Shown in pieces: positions 3,603 to 32,484 of a stretch of 32,783 nt of DNA. The notes under the pieces were generated by a model. The model made no database searches, was not told the DNA's origin, and was given only the letters and a program-made list of their open reading frames with translations. The stretch is from Octopus bimaculoides. Taxonomy: Eukaryota. The first letter of the stretch is position 1, and every line of letters starts with the position of its first letter. Where the stretch lies: assembly GCF_001194135.2 (NCBI RefSeq), contig NC_069005.1, positions 24,549,404 through 24,582,186 of the forward strand. Reading direction: 5' to 3'. The position numbers and the translations under genes are program-made.

Positions 3603-6236
3603 CGAAAAATAGAAAAACAGCCCTGATAGAAAAAACGGAATGAAGGAATGAAATATTGATTCGATATAGAAATATAAATTGTAATTTTCAGCCAATTAAA
3701 ATGGGAAATTAATTTGAGTTTCGAATTAACGAATTGGCGGGAGTGACAATCGCTTTCTGACCATGCACTGCGACAAAAGCTCGGAACACCTGAGGGAACA
3801 GAAGTTTACTTTATGTAGTGATATACGTACATAGCATATGTCAGTAGACATATGCTATGTGCCAAATTCAATTCACATCTACCAAATTCAATTCACACGG
3901 TATTGGTAAACCTGAGGCTACGGCAGAAAATTTATTGAAACTTATGTACTACGGGATCGAACACAGAACCACACAGTTAGTTCTGTATTCGATGTTTGCA
4001 CCCAATGAAACAATAAAAACAATAACTAACTGTTAAATATATAAACTGGGCAGTTACCAAGTTAATGAAAGTAACACCATTAATATTTACTGGTTCGATA
4101 CTCGTCTCTTTGCTGATGGTAAGATGGTAAAATTAAAAAAATTTTTTTGTTAATCTAAAATGCTTCTTTTAAAATCAAGGTATATATTCTGTTTAAATAC
4201 AAAAGGTCTTTGAAAGAATTAGAAAGTTCTTAGCTTTCTATTTTCATTTTCAGAAAAACAAATTTTATATTAGGTGCCGTATAACTGGATAAATTATTGA
4301 AATTTACGTTGTCAATTCCGCAAAGGTTTAATATATTGTATTTACATACTTTTAACTGAAAACATGTATGTTAAAGATATTTAATATTCTGCAAATTCAT
4401 TATATACATTCTACAATATTTACATTTATTTAGATGACTTCTCTATAAATATCATTCTTAGTCAGATTTCTATTTTAATCATTATATGAGTCTTTCTGGC
4501 TGATTTGAGAGAAATTTAGATATGTTATTTGTTCATATTAAATTTTTCACATGAATAACTATGTGTGTGTGTGTGTGTTAGTAATATTTGGAGCTGACGA
4601 TGTTAGGGGGGAAATTTTTATAATAATAGTCCTGATATTAATGCAACGTTTCGGTAAAATATCTTTACCAAAACTTCTTATGCACAAAAAGTGCTAAATT
4701 GTAAATCTCGTTGAATTATTTTTTTATTCACGATACGGAATGTTTTCGTAATTTTTGTTTCTCAAATTTCATATTTGTATATATATATACAAATATTTAA
4801 GTTAAGAGAAATATCTTATTTACTTTACAAACGATAGAATTGACTTTTGAATTTACAGACGGTTCTTGTAAAATAGCTTACCTATCCTCCTCAAAAGTAA
4901 GTGGCTTCAAGAGATGGCAGAAGCTGTATTCAATAAATCAAAGTACATTTACAACTTCAACAACTTTTTTCTACTAGTTGAAAGCTGTAGTTAATCTGTT
5001 ATTTTTATTATCTTTCTCTTTCTTCTCCCTAACTTCATCTTTTGCCTTTCATCACATAATCTATTTTTGTATATGAGAATGAAATATTCATGGACATTTT
5101 TTTTTTCGGTAGCTTGCAAACAAAAAATAAACTTTAACCAAAAATAAACATAAACCTTATTTTTCCTTACGCTGCGCACATGAATTCAATAAATAAATTG
5201 AATAAACTCACTATTTTTATTTCGTTTCTCCAAATAAATTACTTGAAAATCATTCTGATCCGAAGATAGCATGGGACGGACAGAGAATCGCATATTTTAT
5301 GTTACATATTTATGTTTCTTTCAAATCACATTTTATTTCATTCTTCTTATATTACAACTGGAAGACAATGTTAAACTATTATTGGATGTATCTAATTCAA
5401 TTCTTACTGTTTGTAAAACTGTGATTTTAAATGATAACAGTGAAGCAAAGGCGTTTTCATAAATGCTCACTGTGGGACCCTGTCTCTCACTATAAATATC
5501 TGTACATTTCTTTCTCTATCGACAAAATATCTCTCTGGACTGGCACTCTCTCAAAGGGAACAACTATGGAATACTTCATATTTGCATAAGTGGGACTTAT
5601 GTTAATATGAACTATATCATATATTTACATCCGCTTGGGAGTATCATTTATTTAAAACTCTCATTAAGTCATTAATAACACTCATTAAAATAGAAATCGA
5701 TTAGACATTTTCTCTGAGATTGTATAATTATCTTCTTGAAGATTCGATAGCCTGTAAAGGATATGTAATATAGAACTTAATTGTAAGCAGTGACTACATT
5801 TACATTTGAAAGAAACCAATTGCAAACAGTTTTAATTGTAAGACACTACCTTAAGAGACAGAAAGGGAGAAGCAGAAGCAGAAATCTTGTGATAATATAA
5901 TTCTACTCAAGCAAGCAATTCTATAGAATTGAATAATATTGTTGTTTTCTTTCCTCTTTCACATCTGTTTACATTTAATGTCTAAGAGTTCTGAAAATTG
6001 CCGCCAACCTCATCCAGAGCTTATCAAGAAATAATAAAATTCTTGCCGTTTCGCTGGTCGTTTCTTTGCTTTTGAGAAACAGATCAATATTTAAACAAGA
6101 TCCAAGAATTTTGATAGTAAACAAGGAATTTATTGTGTCAATCCTTGATAAAGTGCTTAATTCTATTTATCTAATTTAAATCTTCTTGTTAATCTTTCGT
6201 ACATTTTTTTTATTTCTTTTTTTTTTCTTTTTTCAG

Positions 6237-7522
6237 TTCGATTTGAGAATGAAGAAGCTGAACTTGCAAAGTTTGTAGACTTCCTTAAAACCTCATATCC
6301 AGACGAGTTCAAATCTTTTAAAGGAAAAAGTTTTGAATCAGTGTTTTCAAAGCTCAGAGAAAGTATGGCTCTGCATAAAGTATTTCCAAATACAGAAGAT
6401 TCCACAAAAGTGTCAACGACAAATGGGAACTGCACATGTGACACGACCGCCACCACGCAGCGTCACACGGAACGGCGCCATTTACATAACTCAAATGATC
6501 ACGTGACGCTTATCAGTGCCTTTAAGAATGATGGGACTGCAAACAACCTAGCAGTTTCAAGAACTACAACGCCCTCTACGGGCAAAAAGCAAAACCTCAC
6601 ACATCAAAAATACAAAGTTAATAACAATAACAAAAACACAAATAAACACAGTAAAACAAACACTAACAGTAAAGACATTAACAATAGTAGTAGTAGTCAT
6701 ATTTATACAAGTAGTAATAGTCATAAAAACAGTAGTAGTAGTAGTAGTAGTCATAATAATATTAATAACGCTAGTAGCGAAAGCAATAGTAGTTTTAGTA
6801 TTATTAGTAACGATATCAGTGATATTGTTACTACAATTAGTAGTAGTAGTAGTGGTAGTACGACTGATAGTAACAGTGGTATTTCTATTAACAGTAGCAA
6901 TACTACTATTATTATTGAAAATAGTAGCAATAGTAGTACTAATAGTAGTATTACTAGTGTTAATAGTAGTGATATTAGTAGTAGTGATAGTAATGATAAT
7001 AATAATTATGATGATGATAATTTTAATTATAATATTAATAATAACATTATTAGCATAACAAAACCTTCTATGATTACAAGGGAAGCAATGAAAAGTCCAC
7101 GGGACGTTACAATGAAAGAAGCACAACGACAGAAAACAGTGGAACGCAAATACAGCGACACCAGATACTATGCGAAGGGAGCAGACAACAGAACAGTAAC
7201 TAAGGATTTACCCCAAAACACTAGGATCAAACCGGGTTCACCGCACATCAGTGGATACGATGATTCTAAGAAAGCGCGATTACAAACAGAAGAAAATAAA
7301 CTGCATTCTGGGAATGTGTCGGAACCTCCTTTGTTTGTGTTACATATAAACAACATCAAGGAAAGTTTTTATCTGTTCGGCCATTACGTTGGCAAGGAGA
7401 ATGACAGTCGGGATTACAGGAAGGAGGCTCAGTACTACGAAGATGAGTATGAACGGGTACACCACATCTCCCAGGGAATACATATAGGGAGCATTGTCAT
7501 ACTCTTTATTATGGTGCTTGAG
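6237..7522 (+). CDS. Large internal coding exon of a probable voltage-sensor-domain protein (Hv1/HVCN1- or TMEM266-like): long low-complexity loop followed by most of a putative S2 helix
   Basis: Strong acceptor (long T-rich tract then tttcag, ending 6236) and donor AG|gtaaga at 7522/7523. The frame is open for 428 codons: (x)TT-RFENEEAELAKFVDFLKTSYPDEF...ERVHHISQGIHIGSIVILFIMVLE. The last 15 aa align without gaps to the human HVCN1 S2 helix as I recall it (FHYMSITILVFFMME; H, S, I, I, L, E shared). No other exon was found, so the family call rests on one helix. Confidence 0.7.
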
Positions 7523-7819
7523 GTAAGAGATATGTTCTGTTCTATATATTTTATTTTTTGTATTAATCAGTCAATTTAATCCCATGTAATCTGGATTTAA
7601 GATCTCAGCTGTGTAATAATTATATATCGTAAAGGATAATGACATCCAAAAAAATAATTAAAACAATCAAGAAAACAAACTAATTAATTTTACGCTGCAA
7701 CCAAGAAGTAGAAGTCAACGCTTTGAAGTATGGTCATTCGTCGAGAAGAAAGGACTGAAAATGCGAAACATGCTGGAGAAGTTTACAGCGTAAAATTAAT
7801 TATTACATTGTGTACTTAA

Positions 7820-8112
7820 CCCATTACCTATCAGTGATCTCATATGAGATCACTTAAAAATTACAAATTTCGTAATTATCTGTCAATATTTACACATATC
7901 TAACCTTTTTGCTATATCTACTCGGTATATTTCTCTGATATTCAAATGAGGTTTGCTAATTTTTCACCCAATATCTCGCTTATTTCTATTTAAAATGTTA
8001 TTTTGAAATGTTATTTTGATCATACCAGCGTGTTTCTAAGGCTGTTTTATGCTAGAAATCAAAGTTTCATAAAAAAAAAATTCCAGTTAATAGAATTATG
8101 GGAGGTAATGGG
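7820..8112. mobile_element. piggyBac-like MITE with TTAA target-site duplication
   Basis: TTAA-CCCATTACCT (7816-7829) and AGGTAATGGG-TTAA (8103-8116) are perfect inverted repeats. CCC...GGG ends flanked by TTAA are the piggyBac signature. Confidence 0.75.
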
Positions 8113-8523
8113 TTAATTCTTTGTGTCTGATTCTGAAATATGTTTGGTAGTTATTACAACATCACTGGCTAGCAGTAAATGAGTAACAAAAGTGACCGAG
8201 TAAAGAGGTAAAAAAAAACTTTGGTAAGTCAAGTCGACGAGTAGTTTTGCTCCCTACTATCATTTCATTTCATTTACGACTGTCGCTATTATTGTTGTTA
8301 TGACCATTTCTCTACGGAAATGCAAGAAGAAATTCACAATATCTTATTTGATCGTTTTCTACTAAACAGTACAAACCCTGTTCGCTACCTGTTTAACGAA
8401 TCATTATCCGTAGTTTCGCGAGTAGGTCCGAGAAACAGATAGGGATTTTGCAGGCTATCATTTCCTCTTCCCATTAAGTTATTAGGATTGCTTGCATTAT
8501 CATTTGTTTCTGATGTGGGTTTT

Positions 8524-10918: not shown

Positions 10919-11108
10919 TATATATATATATATATACATATATACGACAGGTTTCTTTCAGTTTCCGTTTACCAAATCTATTTGCAAGGCTTCGGTCGGC
11001 CTGGGGCTATAGTAGACAAGACTTTTCCAAGATGCCACGCAGTGAGACTGAACCCTGAGTCATATGGTTGGGAAGCAACCTCCTTATCACACTGCTGCGC
11101 CTGCGCCT
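10919..11108 (-). mobile_element. tRNA-derived SINE, family A (3' end runs into the gap)
   Basis: Reverse-complement match to the copy at 26101-26307 (GGCGCAG..GTG head; GGGCCGACC..AGCCTTG..GATTTGGTAAACGGAAACTGAAAGAA body). Confidence 0.85.
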
Positions 11109-11789
11109 CTAATGGCCTTTGACAACGTCATGAACATCTACCGTTACTACTTTTCTAACATATTCAATAGTAACACTTAATATTAAAAGGTGACATTTCT
11201 TAGTTATTCATTTGTGCTTGGCATATTTCCTTGATAAGTCGCGTTCATTATAATTAACTTCTTTACAGCAATTTACCGATGGAGTGGCCATGTGATCACT
11301 TGACCTGTTAGAAATTGCTAAATTTCGTTCAAATCGTGCCCAGCCGTCTCAAATAATATAAAATCACGTTAGATAATATTAATGTGGTTCTATGTAAAAG
11401 AATGATTACAAGAAATATTTATACTCAAGTGTTCCAACCGTAACCATCCTGTCTTTTTTTCTTTATATGTATTAGAGACGACATAGTCCAATTTGTTCGT
11501 TCTTCTGTGGTGATAACGTTTACTTGTGCGTATTCGCTGACTTTCCCCCCAAGTCCAGCGGCCGCTTAAGTGTTCTGGCCGTATTGGAAATATTTCCTTG
11601 TGTTTGTTGTTTATAGGTTTGAAGGGTGTCTATTGATTATCCTATCTACAGGGGTGGCTACAGAAAATACAAGAACAGAGTTCCTTGGACATATCCAAAT
11701 CCTTGGGTCTTTTGATGTAAGTCCTCTGGGGGTTTTTTTCTAGTCTGGAGGAAGGGGCTGACGTCATGACCCTTGCAGGCTCTCGGAGA

Positions 11790-12890: not shown

Positions 12891-13138
12891 CTATTGTTAT
12901 TGTTTATCCTCATTACTTTATATGTTAGAGATATGTTAGAAATGAGAGACTGAAGTGTTTAGTGAGTATAAGAACAATTTCTGGGGTTCAATGTTTGAGT
13001 GTAATGGAAGAGACAATGTCAGGAAAGACGGCCTTGTTGCTTTGAAAAACTTGTTTGCAGTTCAGGATTATTCTAGCCCTATTGTTATTTCTACTATATA
13101 CTATGGCTGTCATGTAATTTCCTTGCGGCGGTTCATGC

Positions 13139-13618
13139 AGCTATATGCCCTGTGCTTATGGAAGTTACATGCCCTGTAATTCAGGCAGCTATATGCCCTG
13201 TGATTCATGTAGCTATATGCCTTGTAATTCAGGCAGTTATATGCCCTGTAATTCAGGCAGTTATATGCCCTGTGATTCAGGCAGCTATATGCCCTGTGAT
13301 TCATGTAGCTATATGCCCTGTGATTCATGTAGCTATATGCCCTGTGGTTCATGTAGCTATATGCCCTGTGCTTATGGCAGTTACATGCCCTGTGATTCAT
13401 GTAGCTATATGCCCTGTAATTCAGGCAGCTATATGCCCTGTAATTCAGGCAGCTATATGCCTTGTGGTGCATGTAGCTATATGCCCTGTGATTCATGTAG
13501 CTATATGCCCTGTAATTCAGGCAGCTATATGCCCTGTGATTCATGCAACCATATGTTCTGTAATTCAGACAGCTATATGTTCTGTGATTCACGCGGCTAT
13601 ATGCCATGTGATTCATGA
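13139..13618 (+). repeat. Minisatellite, 20 copies of a 24-bp unit (consensus AGCTATATGCCCTGTRATTCAKGY); open as SYMPC(D/N)S(C/G) repeats
   Basis: I read the units individually: 20 x 24 = 480 bp with no indels, and the last three are diverged. ORFs of 157-170 aa are open in two + frames and one - frame. Confidence 0.95.
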
Positions 13619-17778: not shown

Positions 17779-17850
17779 ATCTTTGAAGATAACAGAAATG
17801 CCAAATCAACGGCATAGACTTCCCTATACAAACAGCTTAGTAAAGAAGTG

Positions 17851-18237
17851 GAGGCGCAATGGCCCAGTGGTTAGGGCAGCGGACTCGCGGTCATAGGATC
17901 GCGGTTTCGATTCCAAGACCGGGCGTTGTGAGTGTTCATTGAGCGAAAACACCTAAACGCTCCACGAGGCTCCGGCAGGGGTTGGTGGCGAACCTTGTTG
18001 TACTCTTTCACCACAACTTTCTCTCACTCTTACTTCCTGTTTCTGTTGTGCCTGTAATTCAAAGGGTCAGCCTTGTCACACTGTGTCACGTTGAACATCC
18101 CCGAGAACTACGTTAAGGGTACACGTGTCTGTGGAGTGCTCAGCCACTTGCATGTTAATTTCACGAGCAGGCTGTTCTGTTGATCGGATCAACTGGAACC
18201 CTCGACGTCGCAACCGACGGAGTGCCAACAACAACAA
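17851..18237 (+). mobile_element. tRNA-derived SINE, family B
   Basis: tRNA-like head GGCGCAATGGCCCAGTGGTTAGGGC...GGTTTCGATTCC and an (AAC)n tail. Near-TSD TAGTAAAGAA (17838) vs TAGCAAAGAA (18238). Homologous to 22918-23305 in reverse. Confidence 0.9.
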
Positions 18238-18702
18238 TAGCAAAGAAACTTAAGCTGTTGGTGATGTTTAACCATGGGTTAGACTTAATCCAAAAACCTA
18301 TGACCAAAGGCGATCCATCAGACCTATGATCAGTGGTGTTCCAATCGTGACCATGCTGTATTTTATTCAGACATTGTATATCTAATTTTCCAATCTAAGA
18401 TTACATTATCTAATGTGTCCTTCGTTGTTGCTGCTGTTTAATTTCAGATCAGAGTTGGAGAACAAATATGTCTGTATATGTTATAAACCCAATATGGAAA
18501 ATATTGGCTGAACGGATGGTGTTACTGGTAGATGCCTTCTGGCAGAAGACTATGTATCGAACAGTGAATTCGCATTGGTTATGCGCAGAAATAATTGTGT
18601 AAATGGCGGTGTGAGAGGAAGAGTGTATATGAAAGCGAAGGAGAGACTGAGAGAGCACTGAGAATGTAGATATTAGTAGCGATTCATGCGATACTAACAT
18701 AA

Positions 18703-20325: not shown

Positions 20326-21060
20326 GTCTGCTCTCCGAATTAATCACTGTAATAGTGTAATGAAATCTTTTGGTGCAGTCAATCAATCCACATAGAGATA
20401 GATATACCCATCTTATTCTTGTGGCTGTTATTGTCTTACATTATGATTTAATCCTAACAGAAAACCTCTACATGCTCACTTGACTTACTAGAAATAGCAG
20501 CCAAAACTTTCACAGATCACACTACTGTCTTTAAAAATTTGCTTGGTCAGACTGGATTATGTAGTTTTAGATACTCTACGTGTAAATGATGGTGTAGTCA
20601 TGGCTGTAACGGCTTTGAGCATGGATCTACTGGACCGAGACTGGGGAAGGGTGAAACAACAACAACAATAACACCAACAATAGCAACAACAACTGTGCAT
20701 TAGAGATGACTGTGTTCTTTTGAACTGAAATCTTATTTTCCTTCTCCAATGGTTTCTACCACACACATACGCACATACAGATATGTTCACATACATACAT
20801 ACATACTCGCACGTATACACATAAAGAACCAGGCTACGTACATACATAAATGCATATACACATAGATGCATATACACATAGATGCTTATACACATCCATA
20901 CACACGTACATAGGTTAATACATATATACACAACATAAACGATATCGCGATTTGTTTGTTCTATATAAAACATTCCATTTAAGCATTGCTTACATGTAAT
21001 TGATGGTTTACAAATTGGCTACATGTATGTGTGTATATGTATATATATTTGTGTGTCATC

Positions 21061-21154
21061 TAGGGCAAGTGTCTTCTACTATAGCCTCGGGCCGACCAAA
21101 GCCTTGTGAGTGGATTTCGTAGACGGAAACTGAAAGAAGCTCGTCGTATATATG

Positions 21155-21185
<31 letters not shown>

Positions 21186-22500: not shown

Positions 22501-22917
22501 ATCAGTGTTCATACAGAAAGGGTACTCAATCAGCTGATTTGAACACAATGCAAACTAAACACCTTACACTGCTTTTATTTTCGGATGCCTTAAGGTCTTA
22601 CTCTCCCAGGTTTTGAATTGCCATCGATACTTCCGTACTTTTACTTTTCTTCTAAGTGGAGGTGTTGGCCCTTTGCAAATTCATTTTTACCTGACTTCAA
22701 TCCATGGGATGCCCTAACAGGAGCTGGCACAAGTCATTGAGGGGTCATTGAGGCATACAAGCCACGACTCTGCAACAAAGGTTCGACCCTGTGGTGACAT
22801 TGCTTACAGTTGAGTAATGCCATTATAAAAGCTTACATTTAATCTGAACAGCCATAACTTCAACCCTTACAGGTCTGGGAACAACTGCAAAGATTATGCA
22901 TTCTATCTCTTTGAGTA

Positions 22918-23305
22918 TGTGCGTGTTGGCACTCCATCGCTTACGACGTCGAGGGTTCCGGTTGATCCGATCAACGGAACAGCCTACTCGTGAAATTAAC
23001 GTGCAAGTGGCTGAGCACTCCACACAGTCGTGTAACCTTAACGTAGTTCTCGGGGATATTCAGCGTGACACTGTGTGACAAGGCTGAACCTTTGAATTAC
23101 AATTACAACAGAAACAGGAAGTAAGAGTGAGAGAAAGTTGTGGTGAAAGAGTACAGCAGGGTTCACCACCATCCCGTGCCAGAGCCTCGTGGAACTTTAG
23201 GTGTTTTCGCTCAATAAACACTCACAACACCCGGTCTGGGAATCGAAACCACAATCCTATAACCGCGAGTCCGCTGCCCTAACCACTGAGCCATTGCGCC
23301 TCCAC
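22918..23305 (-). mobile_element. tRNA-derived SINE, family B, full length with TSD
   Basis: Reverse complement of 17851-18237, with a 12-bp direct repeat TCTCTTTGAGTA at 22906-22917 and 23306-23317. Confidence 0.9.
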
Positions 23306-25192
23306 TCTCTTTGAGTAACATATGAAGAAAAACACAGTTAAATCGATCTGTTGAACGTTGTGTGACTTAGTTTCGGATGTGACAGTGTTTGATGCAGTGG
23401 AGTGGCTGATTGTGAGGGGGAGTGGTGCTTCGCTCCAGGTGACACTTTTAGTAGAGCAGCACATTGGGGTCAATTGTATAAACCGTTTTTTAAGCTCGTT
23501 TGTGGCCTGGGGTGGACGGGAAACTCAAGGGCTGCCCCAGGCTGCACACACTCCAGCTACGCCACTGGCTAGATATGTCAGTGAAGTCTTCCTCAAATCA
23601 AAAAACTATATTGTCTTAAAATAACAGTCATGGCACATTGGATAATTTAGTGGTGAACATGTCTGAATAAAAGATTGGATGGTCATGGTTGGAACGGTTT
23701 TTACCAGAACTAAAATGCGGATAAACAACGACAGCAATAACAATAACAGTAATTTAAGCAATGTTGGAAATATGAATAATACGACTTTACAACTATTAAG
23801 TTTGGTGTCTTAGTGTTTGAATATAGTAAAACATTAATATATGGAAAACGATAGAAAAAGAATAACGAAATTTATTTTGACACATTTGCGAATCTTACAA
23901 TCTTTCAATGATAATTCTCCTCCTATGATGTAGCATTGATCGATATTGATCGATTAATAGTATCGATTTCAGCAATCCTTTCGTACATTCCATCGTCGAT
24001 ATTTCAGCTTTATCTCATCTACTAATATTGATTATTGCTAGTCGTACAACTAAATATTCGCTATACTTCACATCATACAAACCTCTCCTCACTTCTTTAC
24101 TCTGTTGTCTTCCGTTGCTCTGCAGTATTCAATCTCAGACTCCTCTACGCTCTGAGTTCAAAATCCAACTGTGCTTCATGTACATTTAATTCTCAATGGT
24201 TAAAAACGAACGAACCAATCATAGACTGAAGAATCCTTATATTCTGCATACCCTTGTTTTTTTTTTTGAGAGGTCTATTACATCATGTCCTTCAAAGTTA
24301 ACAGTACCAGCGATTTCTGCTGCTTTTCACTGTGACCGTTGAATCTAACGCCATTATCCAATCTCCCTTAAAGCAGAAGCAACATTCAGATTTGTGAGTT
24401 CTTCTTCAGCTGTAGATCACTTGCTTGAAGAAACATGATAATCAAAAGTGCCAATTGGTCATATCGACTTCAATGCCTCACCAGTATCTAATTTTTGCAA
24501 CCCAACATAGATAAAAAGCGAACTTGATCACTTGATCACAACAAAACATTTTCTCTATTTTTTTTTCCAGTACTCTTATAATTCTACCAATCGACCACCT
24601 TAAATATCATTAATATTATTATTTTATTATACTCCCTATTCAAAGGATTATACTCATTGTCTAAAAAAACATTATGAATTGAAGCATAATGTTCAAAATA
24701 ATTGCGATTTGTTTTCTGTAGTTTCATTGTGGTTATTCACAGTAATGCTAAATAGCTCTCTACTGAGTACATTATTTCGTTATTTTATACCTTGCAGGAA
24801 ATTTGTTCTATTGTGAAGTATTTTTTAGTTGAATATCTTGTTTTTAATATTGATTTCATACTATAGATGGGTTCTGTTATATTCCTAAATAAACAAATTC
24901 AATGTTTTCTGTGACGGGTGGGAAATGTCAACTTGTGTTGTGTGAAGGCCAAGCCATGGGGGCAGGTTAGGTCCTGTCTTTGATTGTCTTTTGTGAACGG
25001 TGTGTTACTGCATTGTCTGCATCTTCTTTTAGATTATGGGGTGAGCTACAATCCTGGTTAGGTCCAATGAAATGTAAGTCATTATAATGACACGATCCTG
25101 TGCAGAATATTTAGTATAAAGGTTGAGGTTTCGTACTAACGAGGTCCTGTGTAGAACATATTTTTGGGGCGAGGGAATTTAATACATTGATA

Positions 25193-25803: not shown

Positions 25804-26100
25804 CATACATACATACATACATACGAGAGCAAAAGAAATTGATGCTGATTCTCCAAATCCAATCTATTAGTGGCTCAGTTAAGATTTGTAAGACATTCCA
25901 AAGATTCGCTATCGAAGATTCTTTATGTGCATTGATGCACACACCTGCATGCATGCGTCGACAGCTCAGCCAACACAACAACTCAATCACATTTACAAAC
26001 ACCGGGAACTCTTTTAATTCAAAAACTCTTTGTTAGCGTCCTGCTTGAACTCTCTCTCTCTCTCAAGAACTAATATGAAACTCATAGAAAATTCATACAT

Positions 26101-26276
26101 AGGCGCAGGAGTGGCTCTGTGGTAAGTAGCTTGCTTACCACCCTCGTGGTTCCGGGTTCATTTCCACTGCGTGGCACCTTGGGCAAGTGCCTTCTACTAT
26201 AGCCTAGGGCCGACCAAAGCCTTGTGAGTGGATTTGGTAGACGGAAACTGAAAGAAGCCCGTTGTATATATGTGTG

Positions 26277-26307
<31 letters not shown>
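26101..26307 (+). mobile_element. tRNA-derived SINE, family A (3' end runs into the gap)
   Basis: Head GGCGCAGGAGTGGCTCTGTGGTAAG...GGTTCCGGGTTCATTTCC (A/B-box-like); homologous to at least four other copies in the window. Confidence 0.9.
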
Positions 26308-30700: not shown

Positions 30701-30852
30701 TTCAGTTTCCGTCTACCAAATCCACTCACAAGGCTTTGGTCGGCCCTAGGCTATAGTAGAAGACACTTGCCCAAGGTGCCACGCAGTGAGACTGAACCCA
30801 GAACCATGTGGTTGGGAAGCAAGCTACTTACCCCACAGCCACTCCTGCACCT
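30701..30852 (-). mobile_element. tRNA-derived SINE, family A
   Basis: Close reverse-complement match to 26101-26260. Confidence 0.9.
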
Positions 30853-31286
30853 ATATATGTTTATATATATTCATTTAAAATATATAGATGCCTATAATAG
30901 GACATCTAACCCGCTAGAAAGAGCAGCAAAAAACTCTAAACCACAAAATTAGGGATAATTTCAAAAGGGAATGGAAAATAAAAACATTTACCAATCTGAA
31001 AGAAATTTCTAATGATAAAATGTTTATATATAAGTATATATATACTTATATATAGACATACATACACAGCTGCATATATGTATAAGAATACACACATAGG
31101 TGTGCACTTACACACGTATATATACACACAAGCACGTTATATGAATGTGTGTGTGTGTGTGTGCGTGTATGAATGTGTGTTCCAAAACTTGTAACATCTT
31201 TGGATTCCATGTATTAAATATTCTACGTTCAAAGATATTGAGACCATACGATTGTGAATTGCCTCCTTAATCCCTGTATTAGACTC

Positions 31287-32253: not shown

Positions 32254-32412
32254 CGGCTTCTTGGAGTTTCCGCCTACCGAATCCACTCACAAGACTTTGG
32301 TTGGTCGGGTCTCTAGTAGAAGGCACTTGTCCAAGGTTCCAGGCTGTGGGAGTGAACCTGGAACCATGTGGTTGGGCAGAAAACTTCTTATCACACACCC
32401 ACGCCTGTACCT
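32254..32412 (-). mobile_element. tRNA-derived SINE, family A (diverged)
   Basis: Colinear with 30701-30852 (AATCCACTCACAAG..TAGTAGAAG.CACTTG.CCAAGG..GAACCATGTGGTTGGG). Confidence 0.85.
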
Positions 32413-32484
32413 ACATATGTGTGTGTGTATTCTTTTATTCTTCTGTACGTTTCAGCCCGAAGACTGTGGCCATGTTATATATAT

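What the first reader, a model, noticed from the sequence alone, without database searches (positions are those of the whole stretch)
6237..7522. Probable Hv1/TMEM266-like voltage-sensor protein with a ~400-residue glycosylated loop encoded by a single exon
Seen: a spliceable 1286-nt exon, open throughout, hydrophilic for ~410 aa and ending in IHIGSIVILFIMVLE at a phase-0 donor. I count about 15-16 N-x-S/T sequons (NCT, NLT, many NSS, NAS, NTT, NRT, NVS, NDS). Established: in Hv1 the S2 helix carries a His near its outer end (human H140, Zn2+ binding) and an acidic residue at its inner end, and the human S1-S2 linker is only a few residues long. Molluscs are reported to have several Hv paralogues. 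Inference: everything upstream of the helix is an extracellular S1-S2 loop tens of times longer than in vertebrates, mucin-like and heavily glycosylated. An HH pair just before S2 may retune Zn2+ or pH sensing. This could be a cephalopod-specific proton channel or voltage-sensor variant with a large ectodomain.
Basis: partly seen in the sequence, partly recalled or inferred. Interest (0 to 1): 0.75.

Follow-up and report, generated by a model that had tools for sequence, protein, structure and literature searches.

The report
Octopus proton-channel exon with giant loop

Summary
Window 6237-7522 (+) is one 1286-nt exon, and RNA contigs from at least five runs match these ends exactly.

The mRNA joins it upstream to ...LMVDLQAIRF, the end of helix S1. 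Downstream it joins to TFVKLCCMRV, the rest of S2. A spliced protein on record for the same gene (P0001) supplies S1: VVVECICVLAELMVDL.

Orthologues occur in gastropods and bivalves, including Aplysia LOC101852977. They share both ends of the loop and carry S3 and an S4 reading LLLPWRVVRIVNSF. A profile of the family hits human Hv1 (5OQK, E=1.4e-23) as two stretches, S1 and S2-S4. The insertion therefore sits between S1 and S2.

Four points need correcting:
- The gene is not cephalopod-specific.
- The family was published in 2022-23 as the "unconventional" HV3 type (AcHv3, 299-residue loop).
- S1 carries Glu, not Asp, and orthologue S4 lacks the first arginine.
- The 16 sequons are no more than the composition predicts.

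The loop has two conserved, probably folded end modules around an (AGT)n/(AAT)n-derived disordered core. Octopus S3-S4 could not be retrieved.

The parts
6200..6236 (+). Polypyrimidine tract and AG acceptor (AG at 6235-6236)
   Evidence: Sequence. RNA contigs begin matching exactly at 6237. Genomic single-exon ORFs of other molluscs read '..V|RFENEE', which places the AG|TT acceptor at the same position and phase.
6237..7522 (+). Coding exon: last two bases of a Phe codon plus 428 codons. It encodes the whole S1-S2 linker and the outer two thirds of S2.
6239..6442 (+). Loop module A (aa 1-68): RFENEEAELAKFVDFLKTSYPDEF..SFESVFSKLRESMA, ending in the Cys cluster N-C-T-C (6428-6439).
   Evidence: Aligns 44% identical to Aplysia XM_013090418 and to all orthologues. 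AF2 predicts helices 2-19, 21-24 and 32-42 with pLDDT 75-91. A CxC(xC) cluster is present in every orthologue.
6599..7063 (+). Lineage-specific low-complexity core (aa 121-275; 63% Ser+Asn+Thr), built from (AGT)n, (AAT)n and (ATT)n.
   Evidence: 43 of its 49 Ser codons are AGT. Orthologues with 193-204-residue loops have nothing here. AF2 pLDDT is below 50. There is an in-frame TAGTAG indel, and six differences from the window are all nonsynonymous (five in organism B, one in an organism A run). It holds 11 of the 16 sequons.
6990..7085 (+). 96-nt GT..AG stretch removed as an intron in the protein model on record (P0001) but retained in the RNA contigs.
   Evidence: P0001 lacks SNDNNNYDD...ITREA. 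X1 rec1 and X4 rec17 cross it without a gap.
7322..7474 (+). Loop module B (aa 362-412): a beta hairpin LFVLHINNIKESFYLFGH, the conserved sequon N388-D-S (7400-7408), then a helix YRKEAQYYEDEYERVHHISQ that runs on into S2.
   Evidence: Alignment to 14 orthologues and BLASTP against Aplysia, E=2e-5. AF2 predicts strands 365-371 and 376-382 and a helix 393-427 with pLDDT 81-88. The only differences from the window in aa 275-319 are synonymous: two in organism B and one in an organism A run.
7475..7522 (+). Outer part of S2: GIHIGSIVILFIMVLE. His415 (7481-7483) matches hHv1 H140, Met425 (7511-7513) matches F150, and Glu428 (7520-7522) matches E153.
   Evidence: Residue correspondence comes from the profile-to-5OQK alignment. 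The mRNA continues TFVKLCCMRV, like the orthologues' TFIKLFCVG.
7523..7524 (+). GT donor, phase 0.
   Evidence: Genomic single-exon ORFs of other molluscs read 'MVLE|V..', which places the donor at the same position.

Best explanation
Window 6237-7522 is an internal coding exon of an octopus gene for an Hv-family, pore-less four-helix voltage-sensor channel. The gene belongs to the mollusc 'unconventional' HV3-type group and is the orthologue of Aplysia LOC101852977.

What the exon encodes. It begins right after S1 (...VVVECICVLAELMVDLQAIRF|). It encodes the entire extracellular S1-S2 linker of about 413 residues. It ends in the middle of S2, at the Glu that corresponds to hHv1 E153.

Structure of the linker:
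- A conserved helical module A continues the S1 helix outward and ends in a Cys cluster.
- A disordered Ser/Asn-rich core grew by expansion of AGT and AAT trinucleotide repeats. It is free to vary in length and sequence.
- A conserved module B consists of a beta hairpin, one conserved N-glycosylation sequon, and a helix that continues into S2.

Shown here: the exon and its use in mRNA, its splice partners, the orthology, the placement of the insertion between S1 and S2, and the modular conservation.

Inferred: the protein is a proton-selective conductance, probably weakly voltage-dependent or leaky like AcHv3. The reasons are that the first S4 arginine is missing in all orthologues and the S2 Phe150 position is Met. 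Also inferred: modules A and B pack together on top of the voltage sensor, while the core is a glycosylated, unstructured excursion.
For: Splicing: RNA contigs end exactly at 6237 and 7522. Their continuations translate to LMVDLQAIRF and TFVKLCCMRV. Up to 486 nt lie upstream and 792 nt downstream.

Same-gene protein: P0001 (99% identical, UniParc UPI00071E2900) supplies S1, SRPVLILVCALVVVECICVLAELMVDLQAIRF.

Orthology: BLASTP against Aplysia XM_013090418 gives two collinear matches. One covers the S1 end plus module A (44% identity, E=1e-6). The other covers module B plus S2 (E=2e-5), both at a nominal database size of 1e8. The orthogroup HMM scores the octopus S1+exon+10 aa at 187.8 bits, above every paralogue even though the octopus piece lacks S3-S4.

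Full-length orthologues in Haliotis, Solemya, Mya, Mactra, Elysia, Physella and Batillaria carry KFEVFDAF..FLDSRWYETGKDATTILVLLLPWRVVRIVNSF.

Family placement: the profile against the PDB finds human Hv1 5OQK (1.4e-23) and the mouse Hv1 chimera 3WKV (7.6e-20). Each match is split into S1 and S2-S4.

Conserved gene structure: in Solemya the loop is also one exon, followed by a tiny exon and then an S3-S4 exon. Genomic ORFs from other molluscs share both splice positions.

Structure prediction: AF2 gives structured ends and a disordered middle.

Literature: AcHv3 has a 299-residue S1-S2 loop, an xPWRxxR S4 and a proton-selective leak (PMC10911540). [quoted passage not shown]
Against: Octopus S3 and S4 were not seen. 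Neither flanking exon is in the window, and no cephalopod full-length protein came up in the protein search.

Pfam finds no domain in the orthologues at E<=1. The structure comparison of the Haliotis model with the PDB was not significant; the best hits are voltage-sensor channels at E about 0.5.

No member of this particular orthogroup has been recorded electrophysiologically. It departs from canonical Hv at three functional positions: Asp to Glu in S1, Phe150 to Met in S2, and the first S4 arginine missing. Proton conduction is therefore by analogy only.

Glycosylation and the outside location of the loop follow from topology and one conserved sequon, not from data.

The between-species substitution contrast rests on about 10 differences.
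Confidence: 0.88

Rival explanations
1. The protein is a non-conducting voltage sensor of the TMEM266/C15orf27 kind rather than a proton channel. The fold and large loop are the same, but there is no proton permeation.
For: The orthogroup HMM scores the Lingula 'C15orf27 homolog' (130.9 bits) about as high as AcHv3 (124.4) and above Hv1 proteins (72-94). That Lingula protein also has a long S1-S2 loop and an S2 reading HISSIVILGIFLVE. The orthogroup lacks the first S4 arginine and Phe150.
Against: S1 keeps an acidic filter residue (Glu) and S4 keeps the Hv-typical Trp in all orthologues. According to PMC10377628, Asp112 was identified as the filter precisely because C15orf27 differs there, and Glu supports selectivity in EtHv1. 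AcHv3, with the same LPWRxxR S4, conducts protons (PMC10911540). The only significant solved-structure matches are Hv1.
Confidence: 0.2
2. The hydrophobic end of the exon is a lone membrane helix of an unrelated protein, and the 410 hydrophilic residues are a cytoplasmic or secreted low-complexity region.
For: Pfam finds nothing in the exon. The first protein search with the last 156 residues found nothing. The charged, Ser/Asn-rich composition looks like an intracellular disordered region.
Against: The mRNA joins the exon to an S1 end and to the rest of S2. P0001 has S1. Orthologues have S1-S4. The profile hits Hv1 structures.
Confidence: 0.02
3. The low-complexity middle is not part of the protein: it is removed as one or more small introns, so the real loop is much shorter.
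For: The protein model on record (P0001) removes 96 nt (6990-7085) with GT..AG ends. Short-read contigs break up between 6879 and 6990 in some runs.
Against: Contigs X1 rec1 and X4 rec17 cover 6237-7522 without a gap, and X14 covers 6237-7428 with only in-frame indels. No supported joint matching 6989>7086 is listed. The removed piece would be only 32 of about 155 core residues. The break-ups fit repeat polymorphism.
Confidence: 0.07

Closest known systems
Aplysia californica LOC101852977 (XM_013090418), one of seven putative Aplysia HV genes listed in the supplement of PMC10377628
   Same: Orthologue. It shares the S1 end AELMVDLQGIKF, the loop start RFENELEEIKRFV..YP, the loop end VFVLEINNVIDSF..NDT..EYRKIY..LHFISLSILSVMVLETAVKLFC, a poly-Ser run in the loop, and a Glu at the S1 filter position.
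   Different: The Aplysia loop is longer, at roughly 590-600 residues against 413. Its low-complexity part has a different sequence. It is uncharacterised too.
AcHv3 (Aplysia, XM_005094218), the characterised 'unconventional' HV3 channel (PMC10911540)
   Same: A very large S1-S2 loop (299 residues). S4 without the first arginine and with Pro before Trp, as in the orthologues of the octopus gene. A helix motif FVxxIxKKYPDEV at the start of the loop. A long C-terminus.
   Different: It is a paralogue, not an orthologue (124 bits against 681 for XM_013090418). AcHv3 has Asp in S1, lacks the VFVLEINN hairpin module, and has a much longer C-terminus (535 residues).
Human Hv1 (HVCN1; PDB 5OQK, 3WKV)
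   Same: S1 and S2-S4 align. The equivalents of H140, S143, E153, K157 and R162 are present in the octopus S2 (GIHIGS...MVLETFVKLCCMR).
   Different: The human S1-S2 linker is about 10 residues. Human Hv1 has Asp112 where the octopus has Glu, Phe150 where it has Met, and RxWRxxR where the orthologues have LPWRxxR.
TMEM266 / C15orf27 and its lophotrochozoan homologues (e.g. Lingula XM_013530614)
   Same: A pore-less voltage-sensor protein. The Lingula homologue has a loop of roughly 200 residues and a very similar outer S2. Its HMM score is similar to that of AcHv3.
   Different: The octopus protein keeps an acidic S1 filter residue, and its orthologues keep the S4 Trp. TMEM266 is reported as non-conducting (PMC10377628, citing Papp et al. 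2019).

Membership tests
Hv (voltage-gated proton channel) superfamily | Four-helix voltage-sensor domain with no pore domain, alignable to Hv1 | tested here: met
   The orthogroup profile hits human Hv1 5OQK at E=1.4e-23 and 3WKV at 7.6e-20, each as S1 plus S2-S4. The next hit is a Cav3 sensor at 3.5e-4. For the octopus gene itself only S1 (P0001) and the first 26 residues of S2 were seen.
Hv superfamily | Acidic selectivity-filter residue in mid-S1 (Asp112 in hHv1) | tested here: met
   Octopus S1 reads LVVVECICVLAELMVDL, against hHv1 LVVLDALLVLAELILDL. The residue is Glu, not Asp. A natural Glu filter is proton-selective in EtHv1 (PMC10377628).
Hv superfamily | S4 signature RxWRxxR | not testable with these tools
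   The octopus S4 exon is not in the window, and no cephalopod protein was returned. In all orthologues S4 reads LLLPWRVVRIVNSF: Trp, R2 and R3 are present and R1 is absent.
Hv superfamily | S2 His at the outer end (H140) and Glu at the inner end (E153) | tested here: met
   His415 and Glu428 of the exon.
Hv superfamily | Conserved S2 Phe of the hydrophobic plug (F150) | tested here: not met
   The position is Met425 in the octopus. It is Met in nearly all aligned orthologues (Leu in three exon-ORF hits, P0007, P0010 and P0012).
Mollusc unconventional HV3-type channels (AcHv3-like) | [quoted passage not shown] | tested here: met
   413 residues lie between the S1 end and the S2 His. Orthologues have 193-579.
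Mollusc unconventional HV3-type channels (AcHv3-like) | xPWRxxR in S4 | not testable with these tools
   Met in every orthologue. The octopus S4 was not retrieved.
Mollusc unconventional HV3-type channels (AcHv3-like) | Large intracellular C-terminus with a coiled coil after S4 | tested here: inconclusive
   Orthologues have about 230-300 residues after S4, and in the Haliotis model the S4 helix runs on to residue 406. For the octopus, 792 nt of mRNA follow the exon, but their sequence could not be read.
TMEM266 / C15orf27 | No acidic residue at the Hv1 Asp112 position; non-conducting sensor | tested here: not met
   The octopus and all orthologues have Glu there. The criterion is taken from PMC10377628 section 3.1. 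No human TMEM266 sequence was compared directly.

The most novel reading that the evidence does not exclude
Modules A and B of the loop (helices, a CxC cluster, a beta hairpin, one conserved glycan site and a conserved His two to three turns above the Zn2+-binding His) form a small folded ectodomain on top of the voltage sensor. This ectodomain is conserved across molluscs and would act as an extracellular sensor, for metal, pH or a ligand, that sets proton flux. The published description of such loops as lacking organisation would then be incomplete. In the octopus the ectodomain carries a repeat-derived, length-polymorphic glycosylated brush.
Probability: 0.25. Interest if true: 0.55.

Novelty: new member of a known kind. 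Interest (0 to 1): 0.35.

Why it matters
The result confirms that a reader with only the raw sequence correctly recognised half a transmembrane helix as Hv1 S2, and it places the exon in a family that is still barely studied.

Only AcHv3 has been recorded from the large-loop group. The orthogroup found here combines a Glu filter, Met at the Phe150 position, LPWRxxR in S4 and a conserved TFEVTTQVTYL tail. It is present from protobranch bivalves to the octopus and has no functional data.

Two small results go beyond the papers I read:
- The S1-S2 loop has two conserved, probably structured end modules, always encoded with the outer S2 on one exon with fixed splice sites.
- All the length variation (193 to about 590 residues) is packed between those modules. 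In the octopus it arose from trinucleotide-repeat expansion.

This gives clean deletion constructs for asking what the loop does.

Tried and rejected
- Pfam on the exon gave only noise, and Pfam on orthologues gave nothing.
- The word-indexed protein search with the last 156 residues found nothing. The exhaustive HMMER search was needed.
- Exact and fuzzy searches for the 30-nt splice partners in the window found nothing. The neighbouring exons lie beyond the window or in N-gaps.
- A six-frame scan for an S4-like R..R..R exon and tblastn of all orthologues found no other exon of the gene in the window.
- The octopus pieces alone against the PDB gave a best hit to the mouse Hv1 chimera S1, but at E=0.14, which is not significant.
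- The Foldseek search of the Haliotis model against the PDB had no significant match. The top hits were all voltage-sensor channels.
- No gene producing P0004 is on record.
- Rfam and tRNA scans of the window were empty.
- Excess sequons as evidence of selection for glycosylation: rejected, because shuffles give as many.
- The HH pair as a conserved feature: rejected, because only the first His recurs.

Full report
**Observation**

The window is AT-rich eukaryotic DNA with microsatellites and six N-gaps. At 6200-6236 there is a long pyrimidine tract ending in AG. The exon runs 6237-7522 and is followed by GTAAGA.

The reading frame starts at 6239. The two bases 6237-6238 finish a codon begun upstream, 428 codons are open, and the donor is phase 0 after GAG. 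At the window's base composition an open run of this length has a probability of 3.5e-14. It is 2.6e-9 if the repeat-derived middle is ignored.

Kyte-Doolittle windows above 1.0 occur only from residue 406 on. Shuffling the residues gives 13.3 +/- 2.9 for the whole exon and 17.4 +/- 3.0 within three segments. The number is therefore a consequence of Asn/Ser richness and is not a signal.

**Transcription and splicing**

Thirteen runs labelled RNA from one organism and one from a second organism hold the exon. Assembled RNA contigs match the genome exactly from 6237 to 7522 and then continue into sequence that is not adjacent in the genome:
- X1 rec1 (2203 nt)
- X4 rec17 (2564 nt)
- X2 rec9/13, X3 rec17/18 and X5 rec25/31

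A DNA run (X15) runs straight through both borders.

The 30 letters upstream...AATTGATGGTCGATTTGCAGGCAATACGTT, read in frame as LMVDLQAIRF. The 30 letters downstream, ACGTTTGTTAAACTGTGTTGCATGAGAGTG, read as TFVKLCCMRV. Up to 486 nt of mRNA lie upstream. In three runs exactly 792 nt lie downstream.

Neither neighbouring exon is in the window. The evidence is exact and fuzzy searches, a six-frame scan for R..R..R and tblastn of all relatives. The flanking introns therefore exceed 6.2 kb and probably 25 kb, unless the exons sit in gaps.

**Relatives**

Pfam and a word-indexed search with the last 156 residues found nothing. The exhaustive HMMER search with the exon found 12 proteins.

P0001 is the same gene, spliced. 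It is 99% identical and its only source is UniParc UPI00071E2900. It supplies the upstream part...ICRSKTLKSLHSRPVLILVCALVVVECICVLAELMVDLQAIRF|RFENEE.... This agrees with the RNA junction.

Eight hits are single ORFs from genomic contigs of other molluscs. They begin '..V|RFENEE' and end 'MVLE|V..'. These are the same exon read through an AG|TT acceptor and a GAG|GT donor at identical positions.

A second search with the Haliotis protein P0004 returned full-length relatives from Haliotis, Solemya, Mya, Mactra, Dreissena, Elysia, Plakobranchus, Pomacea, Biomphalaria and Batillaria. Several are named 'voltage-gated hydrogen channel 1' by their sources. All of them have:
- S1 ..VV[VI]EC.CV..ELMVDLQGI[KR]F
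- the loop start RFENEE
- S2 ..MV[LI]ET..KL.C
- S3 KFEVFDAFIV..SFALDF[VI]FLD
- S4 TTILVLLLPWRVVRIVNSF
- a tail TFE[VF]TTQV[TS]YL

An HMM of eight orthologues scores the octopus S1+exon+10 residues at 187.8 bits. That is above every full-length paralogue, although the octopus piece lacks S3-S4.

In the Solemya genome the loop is likewise one exon. It is followed 11 kb later by a tiny exon of about 20 codons, then by the S3-S4 exon.

**Family**

A profile of 21 relatives searched against all PDB sequences finds human Hv1 (5OQK, E=1.4e-23) and the mouse Hv1 chimera (3WKV, 7.6e-20). Each match comes as two stretches, S1 and S2-S4. The next hit is a Cav3.2 sensor at 3.5e-4. The large insertion therefore lies exactly between S1 and S2 of an Hv-type sensor.

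In that alignment the exon residues correspond to human Hv1 as follows:

| Exon residue | hHv1 position |
|---|---|
| His415 | H140 |
| Ser418 | S143 |
| Met425 | F150 |
| Glu428 | E153 |

The spliced continuation supplies the equivalents of K157 and R162.

**Literature**

Chaves et al. (PMC10911540) described three Aplysia proton channels. AcHv3 has 980 residues and a 299-residue S1-S2 loop said to lack obvious organisation. Its S4 lacks the first arginine and has Pro before Trp. It shows a proton-selective leak with very weak voltage dependence.

The review PMC10377628 calls this the unconventional HV3 family. [quoted passage not shown]

Its supplement prints Aplysia XM_013090418 (LOC101852977). 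BLASTP of the octopus piece against it gives two collinear matches: the S1 end plus loop start (44% identity, E=1e-6) and the loop end plus S2 (E=2e-5). No other Aplysia paralogue matches at E<=10.

I found no paper on this orthogroup or on the octopus gene.

**Anatomy of the loop**

Aligning the orthologues shows two conserved modules.

Module A is RFENEExExxxFVxxLxxxYPxxFxxFxGxxxExxxxxL followed by a CxC(xC) cluster. In the octopus it is aa 1-68, ending NCTC.

Module B is [VI]FV[LF]E[IV]NNxK[ED]SF[FY]L...N[DG][ST]...Y..EY.[KR][IV]H..S..[IL]H. In the octopus it is aa 362-412.
- The sequon in B (octopus N388-D-S) recurs at or beside the same alignment position in most orthologues.

Between A and B the length runs from about 60 residues in the shortest orthologues (total loop 193-204 residues) to several hundred. 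Total loop length is 413 in the octopus, 579 in Physella and about 590-600 in Aplysia.

The octopus excess is the core, aa 121-275. It is 63% Ser+Asn+Thr, and 43 of its 49 Ser codons are AGT, with many AAT and ATT codons. It is therefore expanded trinucleotide repeats.

AlphaFold2 on the exon with 11 relatives gives:
- helices 2-19, 21-24 and 32-42, with pLDDT 75-91
- nothing confident across most of 45-360
- a beta hairpin at 365-371 and 376-382, with pLDDT about 65
- one helix 393-427, with pLDDT 81-88, that continues into S2

The Haliotis model shows the S1 helix continuing into module A. Both models are low in overall confidence, and the PDB fold search was not significant.

Comparison between runs supports the same picture. 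The second organism's contig (X14) differs from the window by five nonsynonymous changes in aa 52-231 and by two synonymous changes at aa 275 and 280. One organism A run (X4) adds a further nonsynonymous change at aa 224 and a synonymous one at aa 319. X14 also carries an in-frame TAGTAG insertion. The numbers are small, but the direction fits a free core and a constrained module B.

**Mechanism**

What is shown:
- The exon is used as annotated here.
- It links S1 to S2 of an Hv-type sensor.
- The architecture and splice sites are conserved across molluscs.

What is inferred:
- With the N-terminus inside, the loop is extracellular or lumenal.
- The protein conducts protons, because it keeps an acidic S1 filter, the S4 Trp, and R2 and R3.
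- It probably gates weakly or leaks like AcHv3, because R1 is missing in all orthologues and the plug Phe is Met.
- Modules A and B probably pack on top of the sensor, and the core is a disordered, possibly glycosylated excursion.

The main rival, at about 0.2, is a non-conducting TMEM266-like sensor.

**Verdict**

It is not new in kind and it is not cephalopod-specific. I rate it a new member of a known kind, with interest 0.35.

The downstream exons are outside the window, and the tools did not let me read more than 30 nt beyond the splice.

Noticed in passing
window 10919-11133, 30701-30877, 32311-32437 (+); 21050-21183, 26094-26301 (-): Five copies of a ~130-190-nt dispersed repeat, 72-93% alike. 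Each abuts a TA, CA or TC microsatellite, and most abut an assembly gap. It looks like a SINE-like element with a microsatellite tail. There is no tRNA or Rfam match.
   Followed up: partly
window 7784-8147: The stretch just downstream of the exon, inside the intron, has RNA contig depth in the thousands and many variant letters in every run. It is an expressed dispersed repeat, not part of this gene's mRNA.
   Followed up: no
window 17847-18246 and 22908-23306: An inverted pair of ~400 nt, 89-94% complementary, 4.7 kb apart (I1 and I13). It could be two copies of a transposable element or the ends of one.
   Followed up: no
window 13132-13615: A 24-nt minisatellite of 20 copies, 83% matches, open in several frames on both strands.
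   Followed up: no
window 6990-7085: The protein model on record for this gene (P0001) removes this 96-nt GT..AG piece of the repeat core as an intron. The RNA contigs keep it. It is probably a gene-prediction artefact.
   Followed up: partly
orthologues P0004, P0014, P0015, P0018 (C-termini): The orthogroup ends in a conserved TFE[VF]TTQV[TS][YH]L, which looks like a PDZ-binding tail. Haliotis has at least five annotated isoforms of 506-601 residues.
   Followed up: no
window 6680-6990, within the exon: The repeat core is length-polymorphic. There is an in-frame TAGTAG insertion after 6684 in organism B, and contigs break into short alternative pieces between 6879 and 6990 in several runs of organism A.
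   Followed up: partly
supplement of PMC10377628 (Lingula XM_013530614, Eisenia GIUK01058977, Dendrobeania sequences): The helix motif at the start of the loop (..[FL]V..[LI]...[YF]P..[FL]...) also occurs in AcHv3 and in large-loop Hv/C15orf27-like proteins of brachiopods, annelids and bryozoans. That part of the insertion may therefore predate molluscs.
   Followed up: no
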